From Haliotis cracherodii (lineage: Eukaryota): a stretch of DNA of 64,000 bases. Each line of letters starts with the position of its first letter. Within the stretch, counting starts at the first letter, position 1. The notes under the pieces were generated by a model, which ran no database searches, had not been told where the DNA came from, and saw nothing but the letters and a program-made list of their open reading frames with translations. The stretch spans positions 51,832,001-51,896,000 of the forward strand of contig NW_027266275.1 in NCBI RefSeq assembly GCF_022045235.1. The letters run 5' to 3'. The translations under genes were made by a program, and so were the position numbers. Shown here piece after piece: positions 891 through 24,564 of this stretch.

Positions 891-891
891 C

Positions 892-1422: not shown

Positions 1423-1847
1423 CAATCTCATTAAAATCAGATCTTAGTTCTCTCTACCGCTAAACAAAGATCTGAGGACATCCCATTACGTGTCACGTCA
1501 GACTGACCTTGCGTGTACTTTGACAGACCAATGGAATGTCCAATCAGAAGGTAGCTTTCTCGTGCTTTACGGCACTAATTTCAAATTGGCGACTACGCTT
1601 CGAAACATATTTTGACAAATTCTCGATTACAAATTTGAAACCCAAGCAAAAGAACATTCTGGAATGGCTAATAGATGGTCTAGATTGTATGGATTCAGTC
1701 GTTAAACCCGTAACTATCGTTTGGAATACCCCGTGTTAAAGTTTTCGAAATTGCCCGATTATAAATCACATTCCGACTGTCACTTTCATAATTGGTAAGC
1801 GATGCTCCGATTGGTCGGATGAAAGGTCGTTCTGACGTGACCCTAAT
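1423..1847. mobile_element. Truncated foldback/MITE element (left arm and centre), cut by the start of the array
   Basis: Aligns to 53513-53938, but the right arm is absent. Confidence 0.75.
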
Positions 1848-2294
1848 TATACGACAGACTGTTGAACAAAAGGAACATGTCGGCCACCAAAAATAAATTG
1901 TTGTAAGAAATGTTTTTACAAAAAAGATTTTTTTATCTGGGTCCATAGTTTATATCTGGTTTTGCATCCGTAGATGAAAAATATCTAGTTTCCCTCACAT
2001 TCTTACTAGCCCACTAGCCCGTGTCAGTTTGTCGAATGTAAAAGGTATTGTGGAGGCTGGTATAATAGAGGGTTCTTATATGATATCGCTATTCGGCCCA
2101 GCCAACGTTTAAGGTTAATGTCTACAAGTGATGATCCATATGAAAATGAACAAAATTCACCCAGTTTCACCAGCACGTTTTTCAAACTCTAAACTGATGT
2201 ATGCAACGTTTCAGTTGTAAGTTACAACTTAAGCCTGGTGTTCAGACAAAACAAATCCGTCTGTTTTCAGCCTCTGCAATGCCATTAGGCTTGA

Positions 2295-2605
2295 CCACAC
2301 CGGAAGCTGTCGATGAGCCTCGTTCTGAGTCCTCGAACTCGGTAACGTAGTTACCGTTGCCGTTACCGACGTCCCTTCTGTTTACAACAGAAAAACGATC
2401 GCTTTTGCTCCGCTGACCTCTACGTTTCACTCACTGCTGTATCTTTCCAAGTGTGCCTTCTTCCAAGATGAACACAAGGCTTCACATTCAAGGTATTTAA
2501 GGTCACAATTATTCCACTTAACAGTATTAAGATGTTAAATTAGATGTGAAATTGGTCGTTGTTAGGCAGCAGTATCGGGACTGAAGATGGCGGCCGCCAT
2601 TTGCA
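2295..2605 (+). promoter_or_regulatory. Putative promoter and first-intron elements of the array gene (repeated in every unit)
   Basis: ETS-like CCGGAAG at ~2300-2306; four RFX-type half sites in GGTAACGTAGTTACCGTTGCCGTTACC at 2341-2367; back-to-back YY1-like sites AAGATGGCGGCCGCCATTTG at 2584-2603. The segment is CpG-rich relative to its flanks. Confidence 0.5.
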
Positions 2606-3456
2606 ATTGTCTTAATTGAAAATTTTTGATTGTAAACTTGACATGTGGTGCTTAGAAGAAACCTGTTCGTTCATTATAGTGTCAAGCGATGTAGTACAGA
2701 TGTAAGATAACCTGTATTACGTGAAAAGCAGCTGTTTGGCCCATTTTATTGGTTAATGGTGGTCTTGCAGCACAGCCTGTAAAGCCCACATACACTTGGA
2801 ATTCGCATTGTCAAAAGGCCGAGGTCTAGTGACATATTGTAGTTGTCAGAAGACGTAAGTTGTGATTTTGTAAACGCAGCCGCCGGCGTACATTTAACTG
2901 AACCTAGCTTTCGTTTTTCTTTTTCAGCTCGGGAGGACATAATTCGCTATTATGGCACTCCTGCGGCTGTGAGTTTGTGGCCGTCTCAGGATGAGGAGTC
3001 CGACTGTGTATGTAGTTTTACATGCCCTCACTGTCACTTCTTCCTTCTATTATAGCCCCTGTTTTATTGTACATTAAGTCTGCCCAGTCCCTATAATAAA
3101 CTGTGATTCGTTTTCTTTGCAAACGTATCCCGTATTCTGTCTCACATGCCTCCCTTTGTCCCTCTCTCCACCCCCTCGATGTGTAGCGTTCCCTGGCTGT
3201 GTCCCCTTCCCGTTGTCCCGACCCCCTGAGCGTCTTCACTCCGTTCTGGGCCCGCCCTGTCTACGGTGAGACGCTCCCTGCCCCCGTCACCATTAACCAC
3301 GCTGATCACTACCCTGCCCCAAGTGACGACGATGACAGTGACTACTGGGTGTACGAGGATGAGGACGACCACAGCTTTGTGGATGACAGAGAGATTCATC
3401 CCTTTAGAAAGGCGCTGACGAGAGCTGCTGCCTTCTTTAGGAAGATCTTCTCTTAG
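2468..3456 (+). CDS. Array gene copy 1: 3-exon gene, 111-aa protein of unknown function
   Basis: Exons are 2468-2492 (ATG..CAAG|gtattt), 2928-2968 (tttttctttttcag|CTCGG..GCT|gtgagt) and 3187-3456 (pyrimidine tract..tgtgtag|CGT..TAG). Phases 1 and 0 join in frame: MNTRLHIQAREDIIRYYGTPAARSLAVSPSRCPDPLSVFTPFWARPVYGETLPAPVTINHADHYPAPSDDDDSDYWVYEDEDDHSFVDDREIHPFRKALTRAAAFFRKIFS*. AATAAA at 3970-3975 is followed by a GT-rich tract. Confidence 0.72.
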
Positions 3457-3489
3457 ACTCCTTATCTTTTTAATGTCTGAATGTGTTCG

Positions 3490-3708
3490 AGTGAGTGAGT
3501 GAATGAGCATGTGTGTATGTATGTGTGCGTATGTGAGAGTAAATGAAAGATTGAATGAGCATGTGTTCGTGTAAGTGTGTAAGTGTGTGTGTGTGTGTGT
3601 GTGTGTGACTGAATGAATAAGCATGTATGTATGTGTGTGTGAGAGGAAGAAGGTATGTATGTTAGAGATGAGAGTTAGAGTGAATTAACGAGTACATATA
3701 TGTCTGTA

Positions 3709-3779
<71 letters not shown>
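3490..3779 (+). repeat. Compound (GAGT)n/(GT)n/(GA)n microsatellites in the 3'UTR of the array gene (present in each unit)
   Basis: Directly visible; tract lengths differ between units. Confidence 0.95.
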
Positions 3780-3781
<2 letters not shown>

Positions 3782-3969
3782 CTTTCCACATAACCGCTCT
3801 TTGCCCATTTTGGCGTATTTTTAGGCACATACATTTTGGCCCAACTTTCACTTTCGTTTCGGCAAACCTCTTGGCTTATTGGAATCGCACAAGACTATAC
3901 GTTCTATACAATTTTGGCCCGTTTTTGGATCTCTCTTGGGGCATATTTCTTTCGGCTTTCTGTTATCTG

Positions 3970-3975
3970 AATAAA
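3970..3975 (+). terminator. Putative polyadenylation signal of the array gene (conserved in all units)
   Basis: AATAAA ~515 nt after the stop, followed by the T/GT-rich sequence tgtttctg..ttgtctgctttgtc. Confidence 0.55.
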
Positions 3976-4248
3976 TGTTTCTGTAATGTATACACAAGTT
4001 GTCTGCTTTGTCTACAGTGCTTCATCCTTACAGCTAATAATATCTGGGCGACAGCAGCATCGCAATATAGGCATCTGGCCAAATCCCAAGGTTCCCGAAC
4101 ATGAGACATAAATTCATATGGATATAGTTAATCAGTGAATGTTGCCCCTATATTGCTGTTCTGCTGTGTCCCAATGTCATGATCTGTACTGAGCAGAAGA
4201 TTTCTGAATAGGTGGGGGCTACCTTAAGATTTGACACTTCTAAGTTTT

Positions 4249-4437
4249 TATGTGGCGACAATTGTGACACGGGATATTTTCCGAGGATAGCTCTCTTGGA
4301 CACTTTGTTATTGAAGAATTTTAATATTCCAATAAACTAGCTAATCATTTCTAATGAAACAATGATTGTGGCTTCCTACTGATGGAGTTCGAATCGAGAA
4401 TTGCCTTTCTTCTCTAAAACACAAGTGTCGCCACATA
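4249..4437. mobile_element. ~190 bp MITE-like element in the spacer of each array unit
   Basis: Terminal inverted repeat TATGTGGCGACAATTGTG / CACAAGTGTCGCCACATA (17/18 match) with TA at both ends, as in Tc1/mariner-type MITEs. Confidence 0.5.
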
Positions 4438-5554
4438 GGATATATTACGAGCACTTCACCATCTAATACCGGTAGTCGGACAAGGGATTGAGAGTGATCT
4501 CCCTTCGCCCCAGACAATATTGGATTCCACTCGTCTCTTCATTGTGGCCTTCCAGAAATCGACTTCACTGCTGTTCCTTTGGCCCGTGATCTTCAGAAAA
4601 AGCAGAGGGCATGCTTTTATACCTAGGCTGTCGCCAGGTGCAAGTAAAAAGCCTATGTTGACACCTACTTGTATGCAAGAGTAGATTAATACAAATATGA
4701 CGTAATATTCGTATCTGGCATTCTACAAAAATACATAAATGATAGGAGGGGTCTGAATTCGTCCCCTGTACGTCCACATCAGCGTTTTCAAAATGGAACG
4801 GACAATTGGATTTCTCTGACTGTGAGTGTGTGGGTGGGAAGGATTTTATCAGAAAAAAATAAATTGTCTCAGAAATTGATTGAAAAATAATTATGCTTCA
4901 GACTGTTGAACAAAAAGAACATGTCGGCCACCAAAAATAAATTGTTGCAAGGTGTGCTTTTTTTAAACAAAAGTTTTATTTAGGCTCATAGTTTATACCT
5001 GGTTTTGCATCCGTAGATGAAAAAATATATAGTTTCCCTCACATTCTAAAAATACTAGCCCACTAGCCCGTGTCAGTTTGTCGAATGTAAATGGTATTGT
5101 GGAGGCTGGTATAACAGAGGTTTCTTATATGGTATCGCTATTCGGCCCAGCCAACGTTTAAGGTTAATGTCTACAAGTGATGATCCATAGGAAAATGAAC
5201 AAAATTCGTCCTGTTCCGAGTAATGGAGGCACGAAAAACACCCAGTTTCACCAGCACGTTTTTCAAACTCTAAACTGATGTATGCAACGTTTCAGTTGTA
5301 AGTTATAACTTATAATTAAGCCTGGTGTTCAGACGAAATAAACCCGTCTGTTTTCAGCCTCTGCAATGCCATTAGGCTTGACCACGCCGGAAGCTGTCGA
5401 TTAGACTCGTTCTGAGTCCTCGAACTCGGTAACGTAGTTACCGTTGCCGTTACCGACGTCCCTTCTGTTTACAACAGAAAAACGATCGCATTTGCTCCGC
5501 TGACCTCTACGTTTCACTCACTGCTGTTTCTTTCCAAGTGTGCCTTCTTCCAAG

Positions 5555-6544
5555 ATGAACACAAGGCTTCACATTCAAGGTATTTAAGGTCACAATTATT
5601 CCACTTAACAGTATTAAGATGTTAAATTAGATGTGAAATTGGTCGTTGTTAGGCAGCAGTATCGGGACTGAAGATGGCGGCCGCCATTTGCAATTGTCTT
5701 AATTGAAAATTTTTGATTGTAAACTTGACATGTGGTGTCTTAGATGAAACCTGTTCGTTCATTATAGTGTCAAGCGATGTAGTCCAGATGTAAGATAACC
5801 TGTATTACGTGAAAAGCAGCTGTTTGGCCCATTTTATTGGTTAATGGTGGTCTTGCAGCACAGCCTGTAAAGCCCACATACACTTGGAATTCGCATTGTC
5901 AAAAGGCCGAGGTCTAGTGACATATTGTAGTTGTCAGAAGACGTAAGTTGTGATTTTGTAAACGCAGCCGCCGGCGTACATTTAACTAAACCTAGCTTTC
6001 GTTTTTCTTTTTCAGCTCGGGAGGACATAATTCGCTATTATGGCACTCCTGCGGCTGTGAGTTTGTGGCCGTCTCAGGATGAGGAGTCCGACTGTGTATG
6101 TAGTTTTACATGCCCTCCCTGTCACTTCTTCCTTCTATTATAGCCCCTGTTTTATTGTACATTAAGTCTGCCCAGTCCCTATAATAAACTGTGATTCGTT
6201 TTCTTTGCAAACGTATCCCGTATTCTGTCTCACGTGCCTCCCTTTGTCCCTCTCTCCACCCCCTCGATGTGTAGCGTTCCCTGGCTGTGTCCCCTTCCCG
6301 TTGTCCCGACCCCCTGAGCGTCTTCACTCCGTTCTGGGCCCGCCCTGTCTACGGTGAGACGCTCCCTGCCCCCGTCACCATTAACCACGCTGATCACTAT
6401 CCTGCCCCAAGTGACGACGATGACAGTGACTACTGGGTGTACGAGGATGAGGACGACCACAGCTTTGTGGATGACAGAGAGATTCACCCCTTTAGAAAGG
6501 CGCTGACGAGAGCTGCTGCCTTCTTTAGGAAGATCTTCTCTTAG
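5555..6544 (+). CDS. Array gene copy 2 (exons 5555-5579, 6016-6056, 6275-6544)
   Basis: Same splice sites and frame as copy 1, with two synonymous changes in exon 3 (TAC>TAT, CAT>CAC). Confidence 0.72.
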
Positions 6545-6789: not shown

Positions 6790-6841
<52 letters not shown>

Positions 6842-8615
6842 CTTTCCACATAACCGCTCTTTGCCCATTTTGGCGTATTTTTAGGCACATACATTTTGGC
6901 CCAACTTTCACTTTCGTTTCGGCAAACCTCTTGGCTTATTGGAATCGCACAAGACTATACGTTCTATACAATTTTGGCCCGTTTTTGGATCTCTCTTGAG
7001 GCATATTTCTTTCGGCTTTCTGTTATCTGAATAAATGTTTCTGTAATGTATACACAAGTTGTCTGCTTTGTCTACAGTGTTTCATCCTTACAGCTAATAA
7101 TATCTGGGCGACAGCAGCATCGCAATATAGGCATCTGGCCAAATCCCAAGGTTCCCGAACATGAGACATAAATTCATATGGATATAGTTAATCAGTGAAT
7201 GTTGCCCCTATATTGCTGTTCTGCTGTGTCCCAATGTCATGATCTGTACTGAGCAGAAGATTTCTGAATAGGTGGGGGCTACCTTAAGATTTGACACTTC
7301 TAAATTTTTATGTGGCGACAATTGTGACACGGGATATTTTCCGAGGATAGCTCTCTTGGACACTTTGTTATTGAAGAATTTTAATATTCCAATAAACTAG
7401 CTAATCATTTCTAATGAAACAATGATTGTGGCTTCCTATTGATGGAGTTCGAATCGAGAATTGCCTTTCTTCTCTAAAACACAAGTGTCGCCACATAGGA
7501 TATATTACGAGCACTTCACCATCTAATACCGGTAGTCGGACAAGGGATTGAGAGTGATCTCCCTTCGCCCCAGACAATATTGGATTCCACTCGTCTCTTC
7601 ATTGTGGCCTTCCAGAAATCGACTTCACTGCTGTTCCTTTGGCCCGTGATCTTCAGAAAAAGCAGAGGGCATGCTTTTATACCTAGGCTGTCGCCAGGTG
7701 CAAGTAAAAAGCCTATGTTGACACCTACTTGTATGCAAGAGTAGATTAATACAAATATGACGTAATATTCGTATCTGGCATTCTACAAAAATACATAAAT
7801 GATAGAAGGGGTCTGAATTCGTCCCCTGTACGCCCACATCAGCGTTTTCAAAATGGAACGGACAATTGGATTTCTCTGACTGTGAGTGTGTGGGTGGGAA
7901 GGATTTTATCAGAAAAAAATAAATTGTCTCCGAAATTGATTGAAAAATAATTATGCTTCAGACTGTTGAACAAAAAGAACATGTCGGCCACCAAAAATAA
8001 ATTGTTGCAAGGTGTGCTTTTTTTAAACAAAAGTTTTATTTAGGCTCATAGTTTATACCTGGTTTTGCATCCGTAGATGAAAAAATATATAGTTTCCCTC
8101 ACATTCTAAAAATACTAGCCCACTAGCCCGTGTCAGTTTGTCGAATGTAAATGGTATTGTGGAGGCTGGTATAACAGAGGTTTCTTATATGGTATCGCTA
8201 TTCGGCCCAGCCAACGTTTAAGGTTAATGTCTACAAGTGATGATCCATAGGAAAATGAACAAAATTCGCCCTGTTCCGAGTAATGGAGGCACGAAAAACA
8301 CCCACTTTTCACCAGCACGTTTTTCAAACTCTAAACTGATGTATGCAACGTTTCAGTTGTAAGTTACAACTTATAATTAAGCCTGGTGTTCAGACGAAAT
8401 AAACCCGTCTGTTTTCAGCCTCTGCAATGCCATTAGGCTTGACCACTCCGGAAGCTGTCGATGAGCCACGTTCTGAGTCCTCGAACTCGGTAACGTAGTT
8501 ACCGTTGCCGTTACCGACGTCCCTTCTGTTTACAACAGAAAAACGATCGCATTTGCTCCGCTGACCTCTACGTTTCGCTCACTGCTGTATCTTTCCAAGT
8601 GTGCCTTCTTCCAAG

Positions 8616-9605
8616 ATGAACACAAGGCTTCACATTCAAGGTATTTAAGGTCACAATTATTCCACTTAACAGTATTAAGATGTTAAATTAGATGTGAAAT
8701 TGGTCGTTGTTAGGCAGCAGTATCGGGACTGAAGATGGCGGCCGCCATTTGCAATTGTCTTAATTGAAAATTTTTGATTGTAAACTTGACATGTGGTGTC
8801 TTAGATGAAACCTGTTCGTTCATTATAGTGTCAAGCGATGTAGTCCAGATGTAAGATAACCTGTATTACGTGAAAAGCAGCTGTTTGGCCCATTTTATTG
8901 GTTAATGGTGGTCTTGCAGCACAGCCTGTAAAGCCCACATACACTTGGAATTCGCATTGTCAAAAGGCCGAGGTCTAGTGACATATTGTAGTTGTCAGAA
9001 GACGTAAGTTGTGATTTTGTAAACGCAGCCGCCGGCGTACATTTAACTGAACCTAGCTTTCGTTTTTCTTTTTCAGCTCGGGAGGACATAATTCGCTATT
9101 ATGGCACTCCTGCGGCTGTGAGTTTGTGGCCGTCTCAGGATGAGGAGTCCGACTGTGTATGTAGTTTTACATGCCCTCCCTGTCACTTCTTCCTTCTATT
9201 ATAGCCCCTGTTTTATTGTACATTAAGTCTGCCCAGTCCCTATAATAAACTGTGATTCGTTTTCTTTGCAAACGTATCCCGTATTCTGTCTCACATGCCT
9301 CCCTTTGTCCCTCTCTCCACCCCCTCGATGTGTAGCGTTCCCTGGCTGTGTCCCCTTCCCGTTGTCCCGACCCCCTGAGCGTCTTCACTCCGTTCTGGGC
9401 CCGCCCTGTCTACGGTGAGACGCTCCCTGCCCCCGTCACCATTAACCACGCTGATCACTACCCTGCCCCAAGTGACGACGATGACAGTGACTACTGGGTG
9501 TACGAGGATGAGGACGACCACAGCTTTGTGGATGACAGAGAGATTCATCCCTTTAGAAAGGCGCTGACGAGAGCTGCTGCCTTCTTTAGGAAGATCTTCT
9601 CTTAG
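8616..9605 (+). CDS. Array gene copy 3 (exons 8616-8640, 9077-9117, 9336-9605)
   Basis: Intact ATG, splice sites and stop; protein identical to copy 1. Confidence 0.72.
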
Positions 9606-9855: not shown

Positions 9856-9912
<57 letters not shown>

Positions 9913-11685
9913 CTTTCCACATAACCGCTCTTTGCCCATTTTGGCGTATTTTTAGGCACATACATTTTGGCCCAACTTTCACTTTCGTTTCGGCAAACCT
10001 CTTGGCTTATTGGAATCGCACAAGACTATACGTTCTATACAATTTTGGCCCGTTTTTGGATCTCTCTTGGGGCATATTTCTTTCGGCTTTCTGTTATCTG
10101 AATAAATGTTTCTGTAATGTATACACAAGTTGTCTGCTTTGTCTACAGTGCTTCATCCTTACAGCTAATAATATCTGGGCGACAGCAGCATCGCAATATA
10201 GGCATCTGGCCAAATCCCAAGGTTCCCGAACATGAGACATAAATTCATATGGATATAGTTAATCAGTGAATGTTGCCCCTATATTGCTGTTCTGCTGTGT
10301 CCCAATGTCATGATCTGTACTGAGCAGAAGATTTCTGAATAGGTGGGGGCTACCTTAAGATTTGACACTTCTAAGTTTTTATGTGGCGACAATTGTGACA
10401 CGGGATATTTTCCGAGGATAGCTCTCTTGGACACTTTGTTATTGAAGAATTTTAATATTCCAATAAACTAGCTAATCATTTCTAATGAAACAATGATTGT
10501 GGCTTCCTACTGATGGAGTTCGAATCGAGAATTGCCTTTCTTCTCTAAAACACAAGTGTCGCCACATAGGATATATTACGAGCACTTCACCATCTAATAC
10601 CGGTAGTCGGACAAGGGATTGAGAGTGATCTCCCTTCGCCCCAGACAATATTGGATTCCACTCGTCTCTTCATTGTGGCCTTCCAGAAATCGACTTCACT
10701 GCTGTTCCTTTGGCCCGTGATCTTCAGAAAAAGCAGAGGGCATGCTTTTATACCTAGGCTGTCGCCAGGTGCAAGTAAAAAGCCTATGTTGACACCTACT
10801 TGTATGCAAGAGTAGATTAATACAAATATGACGTAATATTCGTATCTGGCATTCTACAAAAATACATAAATGATAGGAGGGGTCTGAATTCGTCCCCTGT
10901 ACGTCCACATCAGCGTTTTCAAAATGGAACGGACAATTGGATTTCTCTGACTGTGAGTGTGTGGGTGGGAAGGATTTTATCAGAAAAAAATAAATTGTCT
11001 CAGAAATTGATTGAAAAATAATTATGCTTCAGACTGTTGAACAAAAAGAACATGTCGGCCACCAAAAATAAATTGTTGCAAGGTGTGCTTTTTTTAAACA
11101 AAAGTTTTATTTAGGCTCATAGTTTATACCTGGTTTTGCATCCGTAGATGAAAAAATATATAGTTTCCCTCACATTCTAAAAATACTAGCCCACTAGCCC
11201 GTGTCAGTTTGTCGAATGTAAATGGTATTGTGGAGGCTGGTATAACAGAGGTTTCTTATATGGTATCGCTATTCGGCCCAGCCAACGTTTAAGGTTAATG
11301 TCTACAAGTGATGATCCATAGGAAAATGAACAAAATTCGTCCTGTTCCGAGTAATGGAGGCACGAAAAACACCCAGTTTCACCAGCACGTTTTTCAAACT
11401 CTAAACTGATGTATGCAACGTTTCAGTTGTAAGTTACAACTTATAATTAAGCCTGGTGTTCAGACGAAATAAACCCGTCTGTTTTCAGCCTCTGCAATGC
11501 CATTAGGCTTGACCACGCCGGAAGCTGTCGATTAGACTCGTTCTGAGTCCTCGAACTCGGTAACGTAGTTACTGTTGCCGTTACCGACGTCCCTTCTGTT
11601 TACAACAGAAAAACGATCGCATTTGCTCCGCTGACCTCTACGTTTCGCTCACTGCTGTATCTTTCCAAGTGTGCCTTCTTCCAAG

Positions 11686-12675
11686 ATGAACACAAGGCTT
11701 CACATTCAAGGTATTTAAGGTCACAATTATTCCACTTAACAGTATTAAGATGTTAAATTAGATGTGAAATTGGTCGTTGTTAGGCAGCAGTATCGGGACT
11801 GAAGATGGCGGCCGCCATTTGCAATTGTCTTAATTGAAAATTTTTGATTGTAAACTTGACATGTGGTGTCTTAGATGAAACCTGTTCGTTCATTATAGTG
11901 TCAAGCGATGTAGTCCAGATGTAAGATAACCTGTATTACGTGAAAAGCAGCTGTTTGGCCCATTTTATTGGTTAATGGTGGTCTTGCAGCACAGCCTGTA
12001 AAGCCCACATACACTTGGAATTCGCATTGTCAAAAGGCCGAGGTCTAGTGACATATTGTAGTTGTCAGAGGACGTAAGTTGTGATTTTGTAAACGCAGCC
12101 GCCGGCGTACATTTAACTAAACCTAGCTTTCGTTTTTCTTTTTCAGCTCGGGAGGACATAATTCGCTATTATGGCACTCCTGCGGCTGTGAGTTTGTGGC
12201 CGTCTCAGGATGAGGAGTCCGACTGTGTATGTAGTTTTACATGCCCTCCCTGTCACTTCTTCCTTCTATTATAGCCCCTGTTTTATTGTACATTAAGTCT
12301 GACAAGTCCCTATAATAAACTGTGATTCGTTTTCTTTGCAAACGTATCCCGTATTCTGTCTCACGTGCCTCCCTTTGTCCCTCTCTCCACCCCCTCGATG
12401 TGTAGCGTTCCCTGGCTGTGTCCCCTTCCCGTTGTCCCGACCCCCTGAGCGTCTTCACTCCGTTCTGGGCCCGCCCTGTCTACGGTGAGACGCTCCCTGC
12501 CCCCGTCACCATTAACCACGCTGATCACTACCCTGCCCCAAGTGACGACGATGACAGTGACTACTGGGTGTACGAGGATGAGGACGACCACAGCTTTGTG
12601 GATGACAGAGAGATTCACCCCTTTAGAAAGGCGCTGACGAGAGCTGCTGCCTTCTTTAGGAAGATCTTCTCTTAG
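11686..12675 (+). CDS. Array gene copy 4 (exons 11686-11710, 12147-12187, 12406-12675)
   Basis: Intact; synonymous CAT>CAC shared with copy 2. Confidence 0.72.
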
Positions 12676-14730
12676 ACTCCTTATCCTTTTAATGTCTGAA
12701 TGCGTTCGAGTGAGTGAGTGAATGAGCATGTGTGTATGTATGTGTGCGTATGTGAGAGTAAATGAAAGATTGAATGAGCATGTGTTCGTGTAAGTGTGTA
12801 AGTGTGTGTGTGTGTGTGTGTGTGTGACTGAATGAATAAGCATGTATGTATGTGTGTGAGAGAGGAAGAGGGTATGTATGTTAGAGATGAGAGTTAGAGT
12901 GAATTAACGAGTACATATATGTCTGTATAAGAGAGAGAGAGAGAGAGAGAGAGTACCTTTCCACATAACCGCTCTTTGCCCATTTTGGCGTATTTTTAGG
13001 CACATACATTTTGGCCCAACTTTCACTTTCGTTTCGGCAAACCTCTTGGCTTATTGGAATCGCACAAGACTATACGTTCTATACAATTTTGGCCCGTTTT
13101 TGGATCTCTCTTGAGGCATATTTCTTTCGGCTTTCTGTTATCTGAATAAATGTTTCTGTAATGTATACACAAGTTGTCTGCTTTGTCTACAGTGTTTCAT
13201 CCTTACAGCTAATAATATCTGGGCGACAGCAGCATCGCAATATAGGCATCTGGCCAAATCCCAAGGTTCCCGAACATGAGACATAAATTCATATGGATAT
13301 AGTTAATCAGTGAATGTTGCCCCTATATTGCTGTTCTGCTGTGTCCCAATGTCATGATCTGTACTGAGCAGAAGATTTCTGAATAGGTGGGGGCTACCTT
13401 AAGATTTGACACTTCTAAATTTTTATGTGGCGACAATTGTGACACGGGATATTTTCCGAGGATAGCTCTCTTGGACACTTTGTTATTGAAGAATTTTAAT
13501 ATTCCAATAAACTAGCTAATCATTTCTAATGAAACAATGATTGTGGCTTCCTATTGATGGAGTTCGAATCGAGAATTGCCTTTCTTCTCTAAAACACAAG
13601 TGTCGCCACATAGGATATATTACGAGCACTTCACCATCTAATACCGGTAGTCGGACAAGGGATTGAGAGTGATCTCCCTTCGCCCCAGACAATATTGGAT
13701 TCCACTCGTCTCTTCATTGTGGCCTTCCAGAAATCGACTTCACTGCTGTTCCTTTGGCCCGTGATCTTCAGAAAAAGCAGAGGGCATGCTTTTATACCTA
13801 GGCTGTCGCCAGGTGCAAGTAAAAAGCCTATGTTGACACCTACTTGTATGCAAGAGTAGATTAATACAAATATGACGTAATATTCGTATCTGGCATTCTA
13901 CAAAAATACATAAATGATAGAAGGGGTCTGAATTCGTCCCCTGTACGCCCACCTCAGCGTTTTCAAAATGGAACGGACAATTGGATTTCTCTGACTGTGA
14001 GTGTGTGGGTGGGAAGGATTTTATCAGAAAAAAATAAATTGTCTCAGAAATTGATTGAAAAATAATTATGCTTCAGACTGTTGAACAAAAAGAACATGTC
14101 GGCCACCAAAAATAAATTGTTGCAAGGTGTGCTTTTTTTAAACAAAAGTTTTATTTAGGCTCATAGTTTATACCTGGTTTTGCATCCGTAGATGAAAAAA
14201 TATATAGTTTCCCTCACATTCTAAAAATACTAGCCCACTAGCCCGTGTCAGTTTGTCGAATGTAAATGGTATTGTGGAGGCTGGTATAACAGAGGTTTCT
14301 TATATGGTATCGCTATTCGGCCCAGCCAACGTTTAAGGTTAATGTCTACAAGTGATGATCCATAGGAAAATGAACAAAATTCGCCCTGTTCCGAGTAATG
14401 GAGGCACGAAAAACACCCACTTTTCACCAGCACGTTTTTCAAACTCTAAACTGATGTATGCAACGTTTCAGTTGTAAGTTACAACTTATAATTAAGCCTG
14501 GTGTTCAGACGAAATAAACCCGTCTGTTTTCAGCCTCTGCAATGCCATTAGGCTTGACCACTCCGGAAGCTGTCGATGAGCCACGTTCTGAGTCCTCGAA
14601 CTCGGTAACGTAGTTACCGTTGCCGTTACCGACGTCCCTTCTGTTTACAACAGAAAAACGATCGCATTTGCTCCGCTGACCTCTACGTTTCGCTCACTGC
14701 TGTATCTTTCCAAGTGTGCCTTCTTCCAAG

Positions 14731-15720
14731 ATGAACACAAGGCTTCACATTCAAGGTATTTAAGGTCACAATTATTCCACTTAACAGTATTAAGATGTTA
14801 AATTAGATGTGAAATTGGTCGTTGTTAGGCAGCAGTATCGGGACTGAAGATGGCGGCCGCCATTTGCAATTGTCTTAATTGAAAATTTTTGATTGTAAAC
14901 TTGACATGTGGTGTCTTAGATGAAACCTGTTCGTTCATTATAGTGTCAAGCGACGTAGTCCAGATGTAAGATAACCTGTATTACGTGAAAAGCAGCTGTT
15001 TGGCCCATTTTATTGGTTAATGGTGGTCTTGCAGCACAGCCTGTAAAGCCCACATACACTTGGAATTCGCATTGTCAAAAGGCCGAGGTCTAGTGACATA
15101 TTGTAGTTGTCAGAAGACGTAAGTTGTGATTTTGTAAACGCAGCCGCCGGCGTACATTTAACTGAACCTAGCTTTCGTTTTTCTTTTTCAGCTCGGGAGG
15201 ACATAATTCGCTATTATGGCACTCCTGCGGCTGTGAGTTTGTGGCCGTCTCAGGATGAGGAGTCCGACTGTGTATGTAGTTTTACATGCCCTCCCTGTCA
15301 CTTCTTCCTTCTATTATAGCCCCTGTTTTATTGTACATTAAGTCTGCCCAGTCCCTATAATAAACTGTGATTCGTTTTCTTTGCAAACGTATCCCGTATT
15401 CTGTCTCACATGCCTCCCTTTGTCCCTCTCTCCACCCCCTCGATGTGTAGCGTTCCCTGGCTGTGTCCCCTTCCCGTTGTCCCGACCCCCTGAGCGTCTT
15501 CACTCCGTTCTGGGCCCGCCCTGTCTACGGTGAGACGCTCCCTGCCCCCGTCACCATTAACCACGCTGATCACTACCCTGCCCCAAGTGACGACGATGAC
15601 AGTGACTACTGGGTGTACGAGGATGAGGACGACCACAGCTTTGTGGATGACAGAGAGATTCATCCCTTTAGAAAGGCGCTGACGAGAGCTGCTGCCTTCT
15701 TTAGGAAGATCTTCTCTTAG
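14731..15720 (+). CDS. Array gene copy 5 (exons 14731-14755, 15192-15232, 15451-15720)
   Basis: Intact ATG, splice sites and stop. Confidence 0.72.
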
Positions 15721-15995: not shown

Positions 15996-17766
15996 CTTTC
16001 CACATAACCGCTCTTTGCGCATTTTGGCGTATTTTTAGGCACATACATTTTGGCCCAACTTTCACTTTCGTTTCGGCAAACCTCTTGGCTTATTGGAATC
16101 GCACAAGACTATACGTTCTATACAATTTTGGCCCGTTTTTGGATCTCTCTTGAGGCATATTTCTTTCGGCTTTCTGTTATCTGAATAAATGTTTCTGTAA
16201 TGTATACACAAGTTGTCTGTTTTGTCTACAGTGTTTCATCCTTACAGCTAATAATATCTGGGCGACAGCAGCATCGCAATATAGGCATCTGGCCAAATCC
16301 CAAGGTTCCCGAACATGAGACAAATTCATATGGATATAGTTAATCAGTGAATGTTGCCCCTATATTGCTGTTCTGCTGTGTCCCAATGTCATGATCTGTA
16401 CTGAGCAGAAGATTTCTGAATAGGTGGGGGCTACCTTAAGATTTGACACTTCTAAATTTTTATGTGGCGACAATTGTGACACGGGATATTTTCCGAGGAT
16501 AGCTCTCTTGGACACTTTGTTATTGAAGAATTTTAATATTCCAATAAACTAGCTAATCATTTCTAATGAAACAATGATTGTGGCTTCCTATTGATGGAGT
16601 TCGAATCGAGAATTGCCTTTCTTCTCTAAAACACAAGTGTCGCCACATAGGATATATTACGAGCACTTCACCATCTAATACCGGTAGTCGGACAAGGGAT
16701 TGAGAGTGATCTCCCTTCGCCCCAGACAATATTGGATTCCACTCGTCTCTTCATTGTGGCCTTCCAGAAATCGACTTCACTGCTGTTCCTTTGGCCCGTG
16801 ATCTTCAGAAAAAGCAGAGGGCATGCTTTTATACATAGGCTGTCGCCAGGTGCAAGTAAAAAGCCTATGTTGACACCTACTTGTATGCAAGAGTAGATTA
16901 ATACAAATATGACGTAATATTCGTATCTGGCATTCTACAAAAATACATAAATGATAGAAGGGGTCTGAATTCGTCCCCTGTACGTCCACCTCAGCGTTTT
17001 CAAAATGGAACGGACAATTGGATTTCTCTGACTGTGAGTGTGTGGGTGGGAAGGATTTTATCAGAAAAAAATAAATTGTCTCAGAAATTGATTGAAAAAT
17101 AATTATGCTTCAGACTGTTGAACAAAAAGAACATGTCGGCCACCAAAAATAAATTGTTGCAAGGTGTGCTTTTTTTAAACAAAAGTTTTATTTAGGCTCA
17201 TAGTTTATACCTGGTTTTGCATCCGTAGATGAAAAAATATATAGTTTCCCTCACATTCTAAAAATACTAGCCCACTAGCCCGTGTCAGTTTGTCGAATGT
17301 AAATGGTATTGTGGAGGCTGGTATAACAGAGGTTTCTTATATGGTATCGCTATTCGGCCCAGCCAACGTTTAAGGTTAATGTCTACAAGTGATGATCCAT
17401 AGGAAAATGAACAAAATTCGCCCTGTTCCGAGTAATGGAGGCACGAAAAACACCCAGTTTCACCAGCACGTTTTTCAAACTCTAAACTGATGTATGCAAC
17501 GTTTCAGTTGTAAGTTACAACTTATAATTAAGCCTGGTGTTCAGACGAAATAAACCCGTCTGTTTTCAGCCTCTGCAATGCCATTAGGCTTGACCACGCC
17601 GGAAGCTGTCGATTAGACTCGTTCTGAGTCCTCGAACTCGGTAACGTAGTTACCGTTGCCGTTACCTACGTCACTTCTGGTTACAACAGAAAAACGATCG
17701 CATTTGCTCCGCTGACCTCTACGTTTCGCTCACTGCTGTATCTTTCCAAGTGTGCCTTCTTCCAAG

Positions 17767-18756
17767 ATGAACTCAAGGCTTCACATTCAAGGTATTTAAG
17801 GTCACAATTATTCCACTTAACAGTATTAAGATGTTAAATTAGATGTGAAATTGGTCGTTGTTAGGCAGCAGTATCGGGACTGAAGATGGCGGCCGCCATT
17901 TGCAATTGTCTTAATTGAAAATTTTTGATTGTAAACTTGACATGTGGTGTCTTAGATGAAACCTGTTCGTTCATTATAGTGTCAAGCGATGTAGTCCAGA
18001 TGTAAGATAACCTGTATTACGTGAAAAGCAGCTGTTTGGCCCATTTTATTGGTTAATGGTGGTCTTGCAGCACAGCCTGTAAAGCCCACATACACTTGGA
18101 ATTCGCATTGTCAAAAGGCCGAGGTCTAGTGACATATTGTAGTTGTCAGAGGACGTAAGTTGTGATTTTGTAAACGCAGCCGCCGGCGTACATTTAACTG
18201 AACCTAGCTTTCGTTTTTCTTTTTCAGCTCGGGAGGACATAATTCGCTATTATGGCACTCCTGCGGCTGTGAGTTTGTGGCCGTCTCAGGATGAGGAGTC
18301 CGACTGTGTATGTAGTTTTACATGCCCTCCCTGTCACTTCTTCCTTCTATTATAGCCCCTGTTTTATTGTACATTAAGTCTGCCCAGTCCCTATAATAAA
18401 CTGTGATTCGTTTTCTTTGCAAACGTATCCCGTATTCTGTCTCACATGCCTCCCTTTGTCCCTCTCTCCACCCCCTCGATGTGTAGCGTTCCCTGGCTGT
18501 GTCCCCTTCCCGTTGTCCCGACCCCCTGAGCGTCTTCACTCCGTTCTGGGCCCGCCCTGTCTACGGTGAGACGCTCCCTGCCCCCGTCACCATTAACCAC
18601 GCTGATCACTACCCTGCCCCAAGTGACGACGATGACAGTGACTACTGGGTGTACGAGGATGAGGACGACCACAGCTTTGTGGATGACAGAGAGATTCATC
18701 CCTTTAGAAAGGCGCTGACGAGAGCTGCTGCCTTCTTTAGGAAGATCTTCTCTTAG
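17767..18756 (+). CDS. Array gene copy 6 (exons 17767-17791, 18228-18268, 18487-18756)
   Basis: Intact; codon 3 is ACA>TCA (T3S). Confidence 0.72.
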
Positions 18757-20796
18757 ACTCCTTATCCTTTTAATGTCTGAATGCGTTCGAGTGAGTGAGT
18801 GAATGAGCATGTGTGTATGTATGTGTGCGTATGTGAGAGTAAATGAAAGATTGAATGAGCATGTGTTCGTGTAAGTGTGTGTGTGTGTGTGTGTGACTGA
18901 ATGAATAAGCATGTATGTATGTGTGTGTGAGAGGAAGAGGGTATGTATGTTAGAAATGAGAGTTAGAGTGCATTTACGAGTACATATATGTCTGTATAAG
19001 AGAGAGAGAGAGAGAGAGAGAGTACCTTTCCACATAACCGCTCTTTGCGCATTTTGGCGTATTTTTAGGCACATACATTTTGGCCCAACTTTCACTTTCG
19101 TTTCGGCAAACCTCTTGGCTTATTGGAATCGCACAAGACTATACGTTCTATACAATTTTGGCCCGTTTTTGGATCTCTCTTGGGGCATATTTCTTTCGGC
19201 TTTCTGTTATCTGAATAAATGTTTCTGTAATGTATACACAAGTTGTCTGTTTTGTCTACAGTGTTTCATCCTTACAGCTAATAATATCTGGGCGACAGCA
19301 GCATCGCAATATAGGCATCTGGCCAAATCCCAAGGTTCCCGAACATGAGACAAATTCATATGGATATAGTTAATCAGTGAATGTTGCCCCTATATTGCTG
19401 TTCTGCTGTGTCCCAATGTCATGATCTGTACTGAGCAGAAGATTTCTGAATAGGTGGGGGCTACCTTAAGATTTGACACTTCTAAATTTTTATGTGGCGA
19501 CAATTGTGACACGGGATATTTTCCGAGGATAGCTCTCTTGGACACTTTGTTATTGAAGAATTTTAATATTCCAATAAACTAGCTAATCATTTCTAATGAA
19601 ACAATGATTGTGGCTTCCTATTGATGGAGTTCGAATCGAGAATTGCCTTTCTTCTCTAAAACACAAGTGTCGCCACATAGGATATATTACGAGCACTTCA
19701 CCATCTAATACCGGTAGTCGGACAAGGGATTGAGAGTGATCTCCCTTCGCCCCAGACAATATTGGATTCCACTCGTCTCTTCATTGTGGCCTTCCAGAAA
19801 TCGACTTCACTGCTGTTCCTTTGGCCCGTGATCTTCAGAAAAAGCAGAGGGCATGCTTTTATACATAGGCTGTCGCCAGGTGCAAGTAAAAAGCCTATGT
19901 TGACACCTACTTGTATGCAAGAGTAGATTAATACAAATATGACGTAATATTCGTATCTGGCATTCTACAAAAATACATAAATGATAGAAGGGGTCTGAAT
20001 TCGTCCCCTGTACGTCCACCTCAGCGTTTTCAAAATGGAACGGACAATTGGATTTCTCTGACTGTGAGTGTGTGGGTGGGAAGGATTTTATCAGAAAAAA
20101 ATAAATTGTCTCAGAAATTGATTGAAAAATAATTATGCTTCAGACTGTTGAACAAAAAGAACATGTCGGCCACCAAAAATAAATTGTTGCAAGGTGTGCT
20201 TTTTTTAAACAAAAGTTTTATTTAGGCTCATAGTTTATACCTGGTTTTGCATCCGTAGATGAAAAAATATATAGTTTCCCTCACATTCTAAAAATACTAG
20301 CCCACTAGCCCGTGTCAGTTTGTCGAATGTAAATGGTATTGTGGAGGCTGGTATAACAGAGGTTTCTTATATGGTATCGCTATTCGGCCCAGCCAACGTT
20401 TAAGGTTAATGTCTACAAGTGATGATCCATAGGAAAATGAACAAAATTCGCCCTGTTCCGAGTAATGGAGGCACGAAAAACACCCAGTTTCACCAGCACG
20501 TTTTTCAAACTCTAAACTGATGTATGCAACGTTTCAGTTGTAAGTTACAACTTATAATTAAGCCTGGTGTTCAGACGAAATAAACCCGTCTGTTTTCAGC
20601 CTCTGCAATGCCATTAGGCTTGACCACGCCGGAAGCTGTCGATTAGACTCGTTCTGAGTCCTCGAACTCGGTAACGTAGTTACCGTTGCCGTTACCTACG
20701 TCACTTCTGGTTACAACAGAAAAACGATCGCATTTGCTCCGCTGACCTCTACGTTTCGCTCACTGCTGTATCTTTCCAAGTGTGCCTTCTTCCAAG

Positions 20797-21786
20797 ATGA
20801 ACTCAAGGCTTCACATTCAAGGTATTTAAGGTCACAATTATTCCACTTAACAGTATTAAGATGTTAAATTAGATGTGAAATTGGTCGTTGTTAGGCAGCA
20901 GTATCGGGACTGAAGATGGCGGCCGCCATTTGCAATTGTCTTAATTGAAAATTTTTGATTGTAAACTTGACATGTGGTGTCTTAGATGAAACCTGTTCGT
21001 TCATTATAGTGTCAAGCGATGTAGTCCAGATGTAAGATAACCTGTATTACGTGAAAAGCAGCTGTTTGGCCCATTTTATTGGTTAATGGTGGTCTTGCAG
21101 CACAGCCTGTAAAGCCCACATACACTTGGAATTCGCATTGTCAAAAGGCCGAGGTCTAGTGACATATTGTAGTTGTCAGAGGACGTAAGTTGTGATTTTG
21201 TAAACGCAGCCGCCGGCGTACATTTAACTGAACCTAGCTTTCGTTTTTCTTTTTCAGCTCGGGAGGACATAATTCGCTATTATGGCACTCCTGCGGCTGT
21301 GAGTTTGTGGCCGTCTCAGGATGAGGAGTCCGACTGTGTATGTAGTTTTACATGCCCTCCCTGTCACTTCTTCCTTCTATTATAGCCCCTGTTTTATTGT
21401 ACATTAAGTCTGCCCAGTCCCTATAATAAACTGTGATTCGTTTTCTTTGCAAACGTATCCCGTATTCTGTCTCACATGCCTCCCTTTGTCCCTCTCTCCA
21501 CCCCCTCGATGTGTAGCGTTCCCTGGCTGTGTCCCCTTCCCGTTGTCCCGACCCCCTGAGCGTCTTCACTCCGTTCTGGGCCCGCCCTGTCTACGGTGAG
21601 ACGCTCCCTGCCCCCGTCACCATTAACCACGCTGATCACTACCCTGCCCCAAGTGACGACGATGACAGTGACTACTGGGTGTACGAGGATGAGGACGACC
21701 ACAGCTTTGTGGATGACAGAGAGATTCATCCCTTTAGAAAGGCGCTGACGAGAGCTGCTGCCTTCTTTAGGAAGATCTTCTCTTAG
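20797..21786 (+). CDS. Array gene copy 7 (exons 20797-20821, 21258-21298, 21517-21786)
   Basis: Intact; T3S shared with copy 6. Confidence 0.72.
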
Positions 21787-22031
21787 ACTCCTTATCCTTT
21801 TCATGTCTGAATGCGTTCGAGTGAGTGAGTGAATGAGCATGTGTGTATGTATGTGTGCGTATGTGAGAGTAAATGAAAGATTGAATGAGCATGTGTTCGT
21901 GTAAGTGTGTGTGTGTGTGTGTGTGTGTGTGACTGAATGAATAAGCATGTATGTATGTGTGTGTGAGAGGAAGAGGGTATGTATGTTAGAAATGAGAGTT
22001 AGAGTGCATTTACGAGTACATATATGTCTGT

Positions 22032-22087
<56 letters not shown>

Positions 22088-24564
22088 CTTTCCACATAAC
22101 CGCTCTTTGCGCATTTTGGCGTATTTTTAGGCACATACATTTTGGCCCAACTTTCACTTTCGTTTCGGCAAACCTCTTGGCTTATTGGAATCGCACAAGA
22201 CTATACGTTCTATACAATTTTGGCCCGTTTTTGGATCTCTCTTGAGGCATATTACTTTCGGCTTTCTGTTATCTGAATAAATGTTTCTGTAATGTATACA
22301 CAAGTTGTCTGTTTTGTCTACAGTGTTTCATCCTTACAGCTAATAATATCTGGGCGACAGCAGCATCGCAATATAGGCATCTGGCCAAATCCCAAGGTTC
22401 CCGAACATGAGACATAAATTCACATGGATATTGTTGATCAGTGAAAGTTGCCCCTATATTGCTGTTCTGCTGTGTCCCAATGTCATGATCTGTACTGAGC
22501 AGAAGATTTCTGAATAGGTGGGGCTACCTTAAGATTTGACACTTCTAAATTTTTATGTGGCGACAATTGTGACACGGGATATTTTCCGAGGATAGCTCTC
22601 TTGGACACTTTGTTATTGAAGAATTTTAATATTCCAATAAACTAGCTAATCGTTTCTAATGAAACAATGATTGTGGCTTCCTATTGATGGAGTTCGAATC
22701 GAGAATTGCCTTTCTTCTCTAAAACACAAGTGTCGCCACATAGGATATATTACGAGCACTTCACTATCTAATACCGGTAGTCGGACAAGGGATTGAGAGT
22801 GATCTCCCTTCGCCCCAGACAATATTGGATTCCACTCGTCTCTTCATTGTGGCCTTCCAGAAATCGACTTCACTGCTGTTCCTTTGGCCCGTGATCTTCA
22901 GAAAAAGCAGAGGGCATGCTTTTATACATAGGCTGTGGTCAGGTGCAAGTAAAAAGCCTATGTTGACACCTACTTGTATGCAAGAGTAGATTAATACAAA
23001 TATGACGTAATATTCGTATCTGGCATTCTACAAAAATACATAAACGATAGAAGGGGTCTGAATTTGTCCCCTGTACGTCCACATCAGCGTTTTCAAAATG
23101 GTACGGACAATTGGATTTCTCTGACTGTGAGTGTGTGGGTGGGAAGGATTTTATCAGAAAAAAATAAATTGTCTCAGAAATTGATTGAAAAATAATTATG
23201 CTTCAGACTGTTGAACAAAAAGAACATGTCGGCCACCAAAAATAAATTGTTGCAAGGTGTGTTTTTTTTAAACAAAAGTTTTATTTAGGCTCATAGTTTA
23301 TACCTGGTTTTGCATCCGTAGCTGAAAAAATATCTAGTTTCCCTCACATTCTTACTAGCCCACTAGCCCGTGTCAGTTTGTCGAATGTAAATGGTATTGT
23401 GGAGGCTGGTATAACAGAGGTTTCTTATATGGTATCGCTATTCGGCCCAGCCAACGTTTAAGTTTGAAAAGGGGCACTGATCTGAAGCAATTCCCTGGGA
23501 CTGGTTGTTGCCTTTGTTATTGTTTTTTACCCTTGAGTACCCGGATGATATAGCAGAAGTCTAGAAAAGTTCGCGACCTTTGCTTTGCAATTCGTAAGCG
23601 CATTTGTCACTTTTATTGATAGTTTTAGGGCGCATGGTAATATTGATCAACAAAATGAAAAATAGTTTTGGAAATGATAAGGAAATGTTGGCATCTTTGT
23701 GGGTAGTTTCGGTAATGGTGACGAAGTTTTGATAAGCTACATGCTAGGTAATTTTGCGATTTTCTTTTACACTCTTTTGACTTGCAACACAAAGTAAATA
23801 TTTCCCCTGAGCATTGCTTGTTGTATTGTGTTTATATTTTACAGCCAAAATGTGCAAAATTTTCACTTAGGAAATTTATTAAATACTAAAAAATTCAGTT
23901 ATTTTACAAACTGACGGAATAATGTCCATCTGTATTATTATGGTGACGAATTCCAAACATTTTTTAATGTTTAATATCATCACCAAGTGATTGAAAATGT
24001 TAGGATTAAAAGTACATTTGTATCTTGTATAGCTTCTAATCCAAGCATAATTATTCTATTGTGATATTTTTAATAATTTTGGTCAATCTGGTAAATAAAT
24101 TGACAGATTTTCAGTCAATTTGTAAAATGACTGAAATATTTTGACATTTGATAAATTGCCTGAGTGAATCACGTTTTACACATTGACTTAACATATACAC
24201 GCTTACAAAGGAAAAGACTTGTGAAAACAATGTCTATCACGCATCGAAGAACTTCCCAACAAAGACGTAGGGGAATAAGAATGATTTTGTTTAATGCTAG
24301 TGTCAACGCGCATGTTGACGAGGAATTAGCTCTTGGGGGAATAAAAGACAAAATCGGCATCACTGTCCCGGAACGCTTTATGCACAACATGTAAACAATA
24401 AACAACAATTGCACAATGAGCGGAATACCTGTTCTGACAACACAAACATGAGCGGACCTTCCAGCTCGGGGATACATGAGGTGAGCGGAGCTCCAGCTCA
24501 ACATCAAGACGTTTCCTACGAGCGGCACATCCTGCTCAAGGTCGTCCCTACACCAGCACTCTGA

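What the first reader, a model, noticed from the sequence alone, without database searches (positions are those of the whole stretch)
1844..23462. A 3-kb 'satellite' that is really a 7-copy array of an intact, unrecognised 3-exon gene
Seen in sequence: every unit has ATG-exon1 (25 nt, AG|gtattt), exon2 (41 nt, strong pyrimidine tract + cag, GCT|gtgagt) and exon3 (270 nt). Both junctions join in frame to give one 111-aa protein, followed by a 3'UTR and AATAAA. All seven copies keep the start, four splice sites and the stop. The only coding differences I found are two synonymous changes and one T>S, although the copies are too similar for this to prove selection. The ORF track misses the gene because it shows only an 85-aa GTG-started piece. 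Inference: this is a recently amplified, dosage-expanded orphan gene, and I recognise no family for it.
Basis: partly seen in the sequence, partly recalled or inferred. Interest (0 to 1): 0.9.

Follow-up and report, generated by a model that had tools for sequence, protein, structure and literature searches.

The report
Abalone-only small gene in tandem arrays

Summary
Window 1844-23462 carries seven 3.05-kb units, each with an intact ATG, GT-AG sites and an open frame.

The gene is real.
- Intron 1 (2492/2928) is spliced in contigs of three public runs.
- All 54 copies I examined from eight arrays keep the frame.
- dN/dS is 0.13-0.23 at dS up to 0.78.
- Between the two subfamilies only the exons still align.

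Three points of the reading need correction.
1. Exon 2 most likely ends at 3007 (donor TGT|GTATGT), not 2968, giving 124 aa instead of 111.
2. The gene is already recognised. The genome is Haliotis cracherodii, and RefSeq lists 124-aa "uncharacterized protein" models. One (P0016) is identical to the product of copies 6 and 7.
3. It is not a young local orphan. The genome holds at least 185 copies in tandem arrays on seven chromosome-scale contigs. H. rufescens and H. asinina have relatives, and nothing turned up outside Haliotis.

A 5' non-coding exon lies in the preceding unit, so copy 1 lacks it.

The protein is acidic, predicted mostly disordered, and ends in a cationic amphipathic helix. 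Its function is untested. Intron 2 splicing was not seen directly.

The scan earlier noted other abalone-only gene arrays in this genome, probably of other families.

The parts
1844..23462 (+). Tandem array: seven full units of about 3.05 kb plus a 270-bp start of an eighth
   Evidence: blastn of unit 1 against the window. No homology to the unit lies left of 1844.
2271..3456 (+). Gene copy 1, exon B acceptor to stop. Exon B 2271-2492 (ATG at 2468), exon 2 2928-3007, exon 3 CDS 3187-3456. It lacks the upstream exon A because the array starts at 1844.
5358..6544 (+). Gene copy 2: exon B 5358-5579 (ATG 5555), exon 2 6016-6095, exon 3 CDS 6275-6544
8419..9605 (+). Gene copy 3: exon B 8419-8640 (ATG 8616), exon 2 9077-9156, exon 3 CDS 9336-9605
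11489..12675 (+). Gene copy 4: exon B 11489-11710 (ATG 11686), exon 2 12147-12226, exon 3 CDS 12406-12675
14534..15720 (+). Gene copy 5: exon B 14534-14755 (ATG 14731), exon 2 15192-15271, exon 3 CDS 15451-15720
17570..18756 (+). Gene copy 6 (T3S): exon B 17570-17791 (ATG 17767), exon 2 18228-18307, exon 3 CDS 18487-18756. Its product equals RefSeq protein P0016.
20600..21786 (+). Gene copy 7 (T3S): exon B 20600-20821 (ATG 20797), exon 2 21258-21337, exon 3 CDS 21517-21786. Its product equals P0016.
4514..4637 (+). Upstream 5'UTR exon A of copy 2. Donor is CAG|GTGCAAGT at 4637/4638, with an alternative donor at 4643/4644. It is spliced to acceptor 5358, the equivalent of 2271. Its 5' end is not defined.
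   Evidence: Back-joints 4634(+3)->2268(+3) in X5 and 4643->2271 in X4; sequence read
7574..7697 (+). Exon A of copy 3
   Evidence: 100% blastn copy of 4514-4645
10645..10768 (+). Exon A of copy 4
13689..13812 (+). Exon A of copy 5
16726..16849 (+). Exon A of copy 6
19756..19879 (+). Exon A of copy 7
22819..22942 (+). Exon A copy with no downstream gene. The eighth unit stops at 23462, before the exon B acceptor.
3457..4100 (+). 3'UTR of copy 1 with (GT)n and (AG)n microsatellites and AATAAA at 3970-3975. The 3' end is not defined: one RNA-like contig runs on to 4100.
   Evidence: (X5 record 29)

Best explanation
The 3-kb repeat is one array of a tandemly amplified gene family restricted to Haliotis. 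Each unit is a transcription unit of four exons. A non-coding exon A lies in the tail of the preceding unit. Exon B carries the ATG plus 25 nt, exon 2 is 80 nt, and exon 3 holds 270 nt of coding sequence plus the 3'UTR. The product is a 124-aa acidic protein (pI about 4.7), predicted mostly disordered, that ends in a +5 amphipathic helix. Shown here: the array, intact frames in all copies examined, splicing of intron 0 and intron 1, purifying selection on the protein, the family's size and spread, and identity to RefSeq models. Inferred: intron 2 is removed at 3007/3187. Arrays are kept uniform by unequal crossing-over or gene conversion while selection keeps the protein. The many copies serve high total output of one product. 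The molecular role is a guess: an intracellular disordered acidic protein that attaches to a membrane or a partner through its C-terminal helix.
For: Array and per-copy integrity. All 42 close copies from five arrays, plus 12 copies of the diverged subfamily, keep the ATG, exon lengths, frame and splice sites; the one exception is a single AG>CG. Window vs C78a copies: CDS 12/375 substitutions with 0 indels, introns 64/609 with 6 indel columns, Fisher p=1.3e-5. dN/dS is 0.13-0.23 at dS 0.54-0.78 between subfamilies, p about 1e-12. Between subfamilies blastn aligns only the exon B region, exon 2 (to about 10 nt past the 3007-equivalent) and exon 3. All 150 scored six-frame hits have open 88-89-aa frames with no stops. 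There are 185 exact FTPFWARP-coding motifs against 0 in the control. Spliced contigs were seen for intron 1 in X1, X4 and X5, and for the exon A to exon B joint in X4 and X5. The exon 3 peptide has no Met, so it can only be translated after splicing (ORF listing start codons). RefSeq 124-aa models: P0016 equals copies 6 and 7. AF2 predicts only helix 107-123, mean pLDDT 57. The C-terminal helix has hydrophobic moment 0.66-0.69 and charge +5.
Against: No contig in the four runs showed either exon 2/exon 3 junction. The two long RNA-like contigs (X4 record 21, X5 record 26) run unbroken through 2926-3481, so intron 2 is retained, and carry a 1-nt deletion at 3323 relative to the window; that source copy may be unspliced or broken. 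The runs are only guessed to be RNA, and contigs cannot give expression level, strand or tissue. Many copies descend from recent duplication, so the 150+ open frames are far fewer independent tests. No protein-level evidence exists. The dosage rationale and the role of the helix are untested.
Confidence: 0.85

Rival explanations
1. One reading: in this 124-type subfamily the strong GCT|GTGAGT donor at 2968 is the one used, and the RefSeq 124-aa form is minor or wrong.
For: GTGAGT matches the donor consensus better than GTATGT and is present in all 42 close copies. Both donors are in frame, 39 nt apart. I saw no junction read that decides between them.
Against: The 39-nt extension is coding-like between subfamilies (3 synonymous against 1 non-synonymous change, with only an in-frame 3-nt indel). 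It is kept in H. asinina proteins as SLWPSLDEESDC. The 2968 GT does not exist in the 122-aa subfamily, whereas GTATGT at the 3008-equivalent does. Alignment between subfamilies runs through to the 3007-equivalent. No 111-aa member was among the 15 of 26 RefSeq cluster members listed.
Confidence: 0.1
2. It is a non-coding transcribed macrosatellite or a transposon-derived repeat, and the open frame is an accident preserved by recent amplification.
For: Within the window alone the copies are too similar to prove selection: CDS vs introns is not significant, p=0.55. One run (X16) covers the whole unit, spacers included, with no spliced joint.
Against: dN/dS is 0.13-0.23 at dS up to 0.78, only exons are conserved, and there are no indels in the CDS. 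Relatives in a distant congener keep the frame. No Pfam domain reached significance in ten other ORFs of the unit, the unit has no inverted or long terminal repeats, and there is no Rfam match.
Confidence: 0.02
3. The amplification is driven by conflict and not by dosage. One version is a germline-expressed ampliconic family of the Stellate/Su(Ste) or Slx/Sly type. Another is an immune family whose acidic region masks a C-terminal cationic peptide.
For: There are hundreds of copies on several chromosomes, in arrays of both orientations. C78a and C78b lie about 600 kb apart in opposite orientation yet differ at only 3 of about 1,060 consensus sites. The family is restricted to one genus. An acidic body plus a +5 amphipathic helix is a layout seen in some antimicrobial-peptide precursors (the comparison is from general knowledge).
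Against: The strong purifying selection (omega about 0.15-0.2) is unlike typical arms-race genes. By eye there is no signal peptide. No tissue or sex information could be obtained here.
Confidence: 0.12

Closest known systems
RefSeq 'uncharacterized protein' models of Haliotis cracherodii (e.g. XP_071106966.1 = P0016), H. rufescens (LOC125376035, LOC125372355 and others) and H. asinina (XP_067685017.1 and others)
   Same: It is the same gene family. P0016 is identical to the product of window copies 6 and 7 under the 25+80+270-nt model. H. rufescens proteins are 95-99% identical and H. asinina proteins 78-82% identical to the 124-aa type.
   Different: These are automatic models with no name, no domain and no publication that I could find.
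Tandemly arrayed multigene families under concerted evolution (sea-urchin early histone repeats, Drosophila Stellate/Su(Ste), mammalian TSPY and other ampliconic genes); comparison from general knowledge
   Same: The units are head-to-tail, a few kb long, and each carries a complete gene. Identity is much higher within an array than between arrays (97-99.5% against about 92%; dS 0.5-0.8 between subfamilies). Frames are intact throughout, and there are several arrays, some inverted.
   Different: The protein is unrelated to all of these. The gene has introns and a first exon that lies across the repeat boundary. Expression pattern and reason for amplification are unknown.
Satellite or macrosatellite DNA
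   Same: It is a long tandem repeat with uniform period that contains microsatellites.
   Different: Each unit is a constrained, spliced protein-coding gene, so it is not a satellite in the non-coding sense.

Membership tests
Haliotis 'uncharacterized protein' family (RefSeq cluster of P0001/P0016 and P0002) | Full-length sequence identity to annotated members | tested here: met
   The exon 3 peptide hits P0001 at 97% (E 9e-52) and P0002 at 76%. P0016 equals the product of copies 6 and 7, compared exon by exon.
Haliotis 'uncharacterized protein' family | Same exon structure: 25 nt, then 77-80 nt, then 267-270 nt, with phase-0 junction before exon 3 | tested here: met
   Seen in 42 close copies and 12 copies of the 122-aa type.
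Protein-coding gene (as opposed to non-coding repeat) | dN/dS well below 1 and exon-limited conservation between diverged copies | tested here: met
   omega 0.13-0.23, p about 1e-12; only exons align between subfamilies.
Protein-coding gene | Spliced transcripts covering all introns | tested here: inconclusive
   Intron 0 and intron 1 junctions were seen in contigs. The intron 2 junction was not seen, and intron 2 is retained in the two long contigs. The runs are only guessed to be RNA.
Concertedly evolving tandem gene array | Copies more alike within an array than between arrays or species | tested here: met
   Within the window 97-99.5%, against about 92% to the C78 arrays. H. rufescens copies share residues (SQAVSLSRF, DDDE, HPL) that differ from all H. 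cracherodii C12 copies. Recent independent amplification is not excluded.
Transposable element | Transposase, reverse-transcriptase or integrase domains, or terminal repeats | tested here: not met
   No significant Pfam domain in ten unit ORFs; no inverted repeats or LTR-like direct repeats in a unit.
Known RNA gene arrays (5S, snRNA, tRNA) | Rfam match in the unit | tested here: not met
   0 matches at gathering score over the whole window.
Secreted antimicrobial-peptide precursor | N-terminal signal peptide | not tested
   The N-terminus MNTRLHIQAREDIIRYYG is charged and looks unlike a signal peptide by eye. No predictor was available.
Any Pfam or structural family | Significant profile or fold match | tested here: not met
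   Best Pfam hit has E=1.1. Atlas best score is 0.78, within noise. The HMM scan of 1.84 billion representatives found only Haliotis entries plus repeat artefacts. The AF2 model is too poor for a fold search.

The most novel reading that the evidence does not exclude
The family of about 200 copies is not simple dosage amplification. It would instead be a conflict-type or defence-type ampliconic family peculiar to abalone. One form is germline-expressed and co-amplified in inverted array pairs. The other is a leaderless precursor whose acidic body masks a C-terminal cationic amphipathic peptide. Either would make it a new functional class of mollusc protein.
Probability: 0.12. Interest if true: 0.75.

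Novelty: new member of a known kind. Interest (0 to 1): 0.4.

Why it matters
A stretch that looks like a 3-kb satellite is in fact about 21 kb of functional genes. The same family occupies more than 20 arrays, roughly 0.7-0.9 Mb at 185-242 copies and periods of 3-5.3 kb, in the black abalone genome. Repeat masking or satellite calling would therefore hide one of the largest gene families of an endangered species. The family is strongly constrained, limited to one genus and has no recognisable domain, so it is a clean case for studying how taxon-restricted genes are amplified and kept uniform. The practical gains are modest: a corrected gene model and a warning about chimeric public models such as P0029. 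The biology stays open until expression and function are measured.

Tried and rejected
- Pfam on the exon 3 peptide: only LTI65/LTI78 at E=1.1, rejected.
- ESM Atlas: best score 0.78, within the noise range.
- Profile HMM scan of 1.84 billion representatives: besides Haliotis entries, P0030-P0032 are unrelated internally repetitive proteins that match short motifs many times, rejected. P0029 is a chimeric model made of nine exon 3 copies.
- Rfam on the window: no match.
- Pfam on ten other ORFs of the unit: nothing significant.
- Terminal or inverted repeats in a unit: none.
- AlphaFold2 with a 21-sequence alignment: pLDDT 57, pTM 0.17. I did not run a fold search because such a model gives meaningless matches.
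- Literature: no paper with the LOC numbers, signature peptides, or a description of such a family in abalone. PMC12627906 only gives the general context of duplication-rich abalone chromosomes.
- The search of earlier findings by sequence was blank.
- The joined 111-aa and 124-aa models were never sent to a search tool. Searches used exon 3 by reference or database proteins, and joined translations were computed only inside scripts.
- A 100-N gap in the C78 stretch was left untouched.
Full report
**Observation**

blastn of unit 1 against the window finds seven full head-to-tail units between 1844 and 23192 and a 270-bp start of an eighth, ending at 23462. Units 2-7 are 97-99% identical to unit 1, except that the first ~315 bp of unit 1 are only ~90% like the others. 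Tandem Repeats Finder cannot see a 3-kb period; it reports only the (GT)n and (AG)n tracts inside each unit.

The only differences in the 336-nt model are two synonymous sites and T3S in copies 6 and 7.

**Transcripts**

Only assembled contigs of public runs were available, and their RNA status is a guess. Laid on one unit, contigs of three runs from three studies (X1, X4, X5) skip 2493-2927 with GT..AG ends.

The same contigs in X4 and X5 also join 4637 (or 4643) back to 2271. In a tandem array this is a normal intron of about 720 nt (4638-5357 in copy 2) running from a 5' exon in the tail of one unit to CAG|CCTCTG in the next (sequence). Two things follow.
- Copy 1 lacks the upstream exon, because the array begins at 1844. 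The exon A copy at 22819-22942 has no gene behind it.

Intron 2 was not seen spliced. The two long contigs run unbroken over 2926-3481 and carry a 1-nt deletion at 3323, so they come from another copy that may be unspliced or broken. The 5' and 3' ends of the transcript are not fixed. One contig continues upstream of 4511 into a ~530-bp insertion found in a C78 unit. Another passes the AATAAA at 3970 and reaches 4100.

**The family is large**

A DNA search of the window's own genome found further arrays on C12 (38.29-38.35 Mb, 98% identical) and on C78 (three arrays, ~92%). A six-frame search with the exon 3 peptide, given by reference, had 242 candidates. All 150 that were scored have open frames of 88-89 aa with no stops, at 74-100% identity, on contigs C1, C12, C34, C45, C56 and C78, with tandem spacings of 3.0-5.3 kb. 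A degenerate pattern encoding FTPFWARP occurs 185 times against 0 for the reversed control, and adds C2. An exon 2 pattern of the diverged type occurs 136 times.

**Selection**

All 42 full copies from five arrays keep the ATG, the exact exon lengths, the frame and the splice sites, apart from one AG>CG. The main comparisons are:

| Comparison | Result |
|---|---|
| Window copy vs a C78a copy, CDS | 12/375 substitutions, 0 indels |
| Window copy vs a C78a copy, introns | 64/609 substitutions, 6 indel columns (p=1.3e-5) |
| Window vs C78 copies | dN/dS 0.13 |
| 124-aa type vs 122-aa type | dN/dS 0.14-0.23 at dS 0.54-0.78 |
| 124-aa type vs 122-aa type, non-synonymous vs synonymous | 29/282 against 39/81 sites (p about 1e-12) |
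| Seven window copies, CDS vs all non-coding | 0.8% against 3.1% variable sites (p=0.007) |
| Seven window copies, CDS vs introns | not significant (p=0.55) |

Twelve copies of the diverged subfamily (C2 and C34; loci L028-L039) have the same layout, with exons of 25, 77 and 267 nt. Between the two subfamilies, blastn aligns only the exon B region, exon 2 and exon 3; the introns no longer align.

**Exon 2**

TGT|GTATGT, 36-39 nt downstream, is present in all 54 copies examined. Four further observations point the same way.
- The extra 39 nt encode VSLWPSQDEESDC in all 42 close copies.
- This stretch shows 3 synonymous changes against 1 non-synonymous change between subfamilies.
- The alignment between subfamilies runs through it and stops about 10 nt after 3007.
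- H. asinina proteins keep it as SLWPSLDEESDC.

The product is therefore most likely 124 aa. The 111-aa form could still be a minor in-frame isoform in this subfamily. The exon 3 peptide contains no methionine, so a constrained exon 3 implies splicing to the upstream ATG even though I did not see the junction.

**Identity**

The exon 3 peptide matches two protein clusters: 'uncharacterized protein' of H. rufescens and H. cracherodii (26 members of 124-145 aa) and of H. asinina (13 members of 120-122 aa). The contig lengths given for the H. cracherodii entries (82,358,895 and 61,937,186) equal those of C12 and C78, so the genome is black abalone. P0016 (XP_071106966.1 and XP_071106969.1) equals the product of window copies 6 and 7 under the 25+80+270 model.

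The gene is therefore already annotated, but has no name or domain. I found no paper that mentions it.

A profile HMM of 21 members, scanned over 1.84 billion representatives, found nothing credible outside Haliotis.

The H. cracherodii 122-aa type is 87-93% identical to H. asinina proteins but only 76-78% identical to the 124-aa type of its own genome. The family, and probably the split between the two types, is therefore old. H. rufescens copies share residues that differ from all C12 copies of H. cracherodii, as expected under concerted evolution or repeated turnover.

**Protein**

The protein is 14.3 kDa with pI 4.7, 22 acidic and 12 basic residues, and 12 prolines. AlphaFold2 predicts only helix 107-123, with mean pLDDT 57. 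That C-terminal segment, FRKALTRAAAFFRKIFS, has the highest hydrophobic moment in the protein (0.66-0.69) and charge +5.

Conservation is high along the whole length, including the parts predicted to be disordered. This suggests partner binding rather than a mere spacer. Pfam, Atlas and Rfam gave nothing, and the unit has no transposon features.

**Mechanism**

- Shown: an array of complete genes, part of a family of about 200 copies under purifying selection, with at least two introns spliced.
- Inferred: arrays are homogenised by unequal exchange or gene conversion, and the copy number supplies a high output of one protein.
- Guess: the protein is an intracellular acidic disordered protein that docks through its amphipathic C-terminal helix.
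- Not excluded: a conflict-type or defence-type reading (about 0.12).

**Limits**

- The runs were contigs only and coded, so they give no tissue, strand or expression level.
- The joined spliced models were not sent to any search tool.
- Earlier scan notes report other abalone-only tandem gene arrays in this genome. Their period (about 2.6 kb for s1-823180) differs from this family's, so they are probably other families; I could not check.

Noticed in passing
G000 C78:53.32-53.37 Mb (minus strand) and C78:53.96-53.99 Mb (plus strand); also C1:34.88-34.90 Mb (+) and C1:35.28-35.31 Mb (-): Arrays of this family occur as pairs in opposite orientation a few hundred kb apart. The consensus gene regions of C78a and C78b differ at only 3 of about 1,060 sites, so either an inverted segmental duplication is recent or the two arrays exchange sequence.
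   Followed up: partly
Protein P0029 (655 aa), from the public collection: A public gene model strings together nine exon 3 pieces of neighbouring tandem copies of the 122-aa type into one protein. This is almost certainly an annotation artefact caused by the array.
   Followed up: partly
L021 (G000 C78:55635001-55645000), about C78:55643181-55643712: One unit carries a ~530-bp insertion exactly at the start of exon A (window-equivalent 4511-4519), and the flanks overlap by 9 bp like a target-site duplication. An RNA-like contig in run X4 reads from this insertion into exon A, so the insertion may supply a transcription start for that copy.
   Followed up: partly
window 1844-2158 and 23193-23462: The outermost ~300 bp at both ends of the array are only ~90% identical to the internal units, while the rest is 97-99.5%. 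This is the pattern expected if homogenisation is weaker at array edges.
   Followed up: no
window 3713-3778, 6793-6838, 9860-9909, 15955-15992, 22035-22084: The (AG)n tract in the 3'UTR varies from 19 to 33 repeats among copies and was not detected by TRF in two of them. The (GT)n tract also varies. These microsatellites account for most of the length differences between units.
   Followed up: no
Read-laying run X16 on window 1844-4900: In a 1.1-Gb run of 'organism B' every part of the unit, introns and spacer included, has summed word depths in the hundreds to thousands (about 140-16,000) with no spliced joint. This hints at a much higher DNA copy number in that organism or at an unusual library. 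It is unexplained.
   Followed up: no
window 36505-37005 (-): A 166-aa ORF looks, from memory, like the N-terminal helix-turn-helix part of a mariner/SETMAR-type transposase. It was not tested with any profile.
   Followed up: no
window 43675-44748 (-): A 357-aa open frame is rich in Glu at one end and in Pro/Ala/Thr/Lys repeats in the middle, and overlaps the 12-27-nt tandem repeats at 43999-44402. It may be a large low-complexity exon of a neighbouring gene.
   Followed up: no
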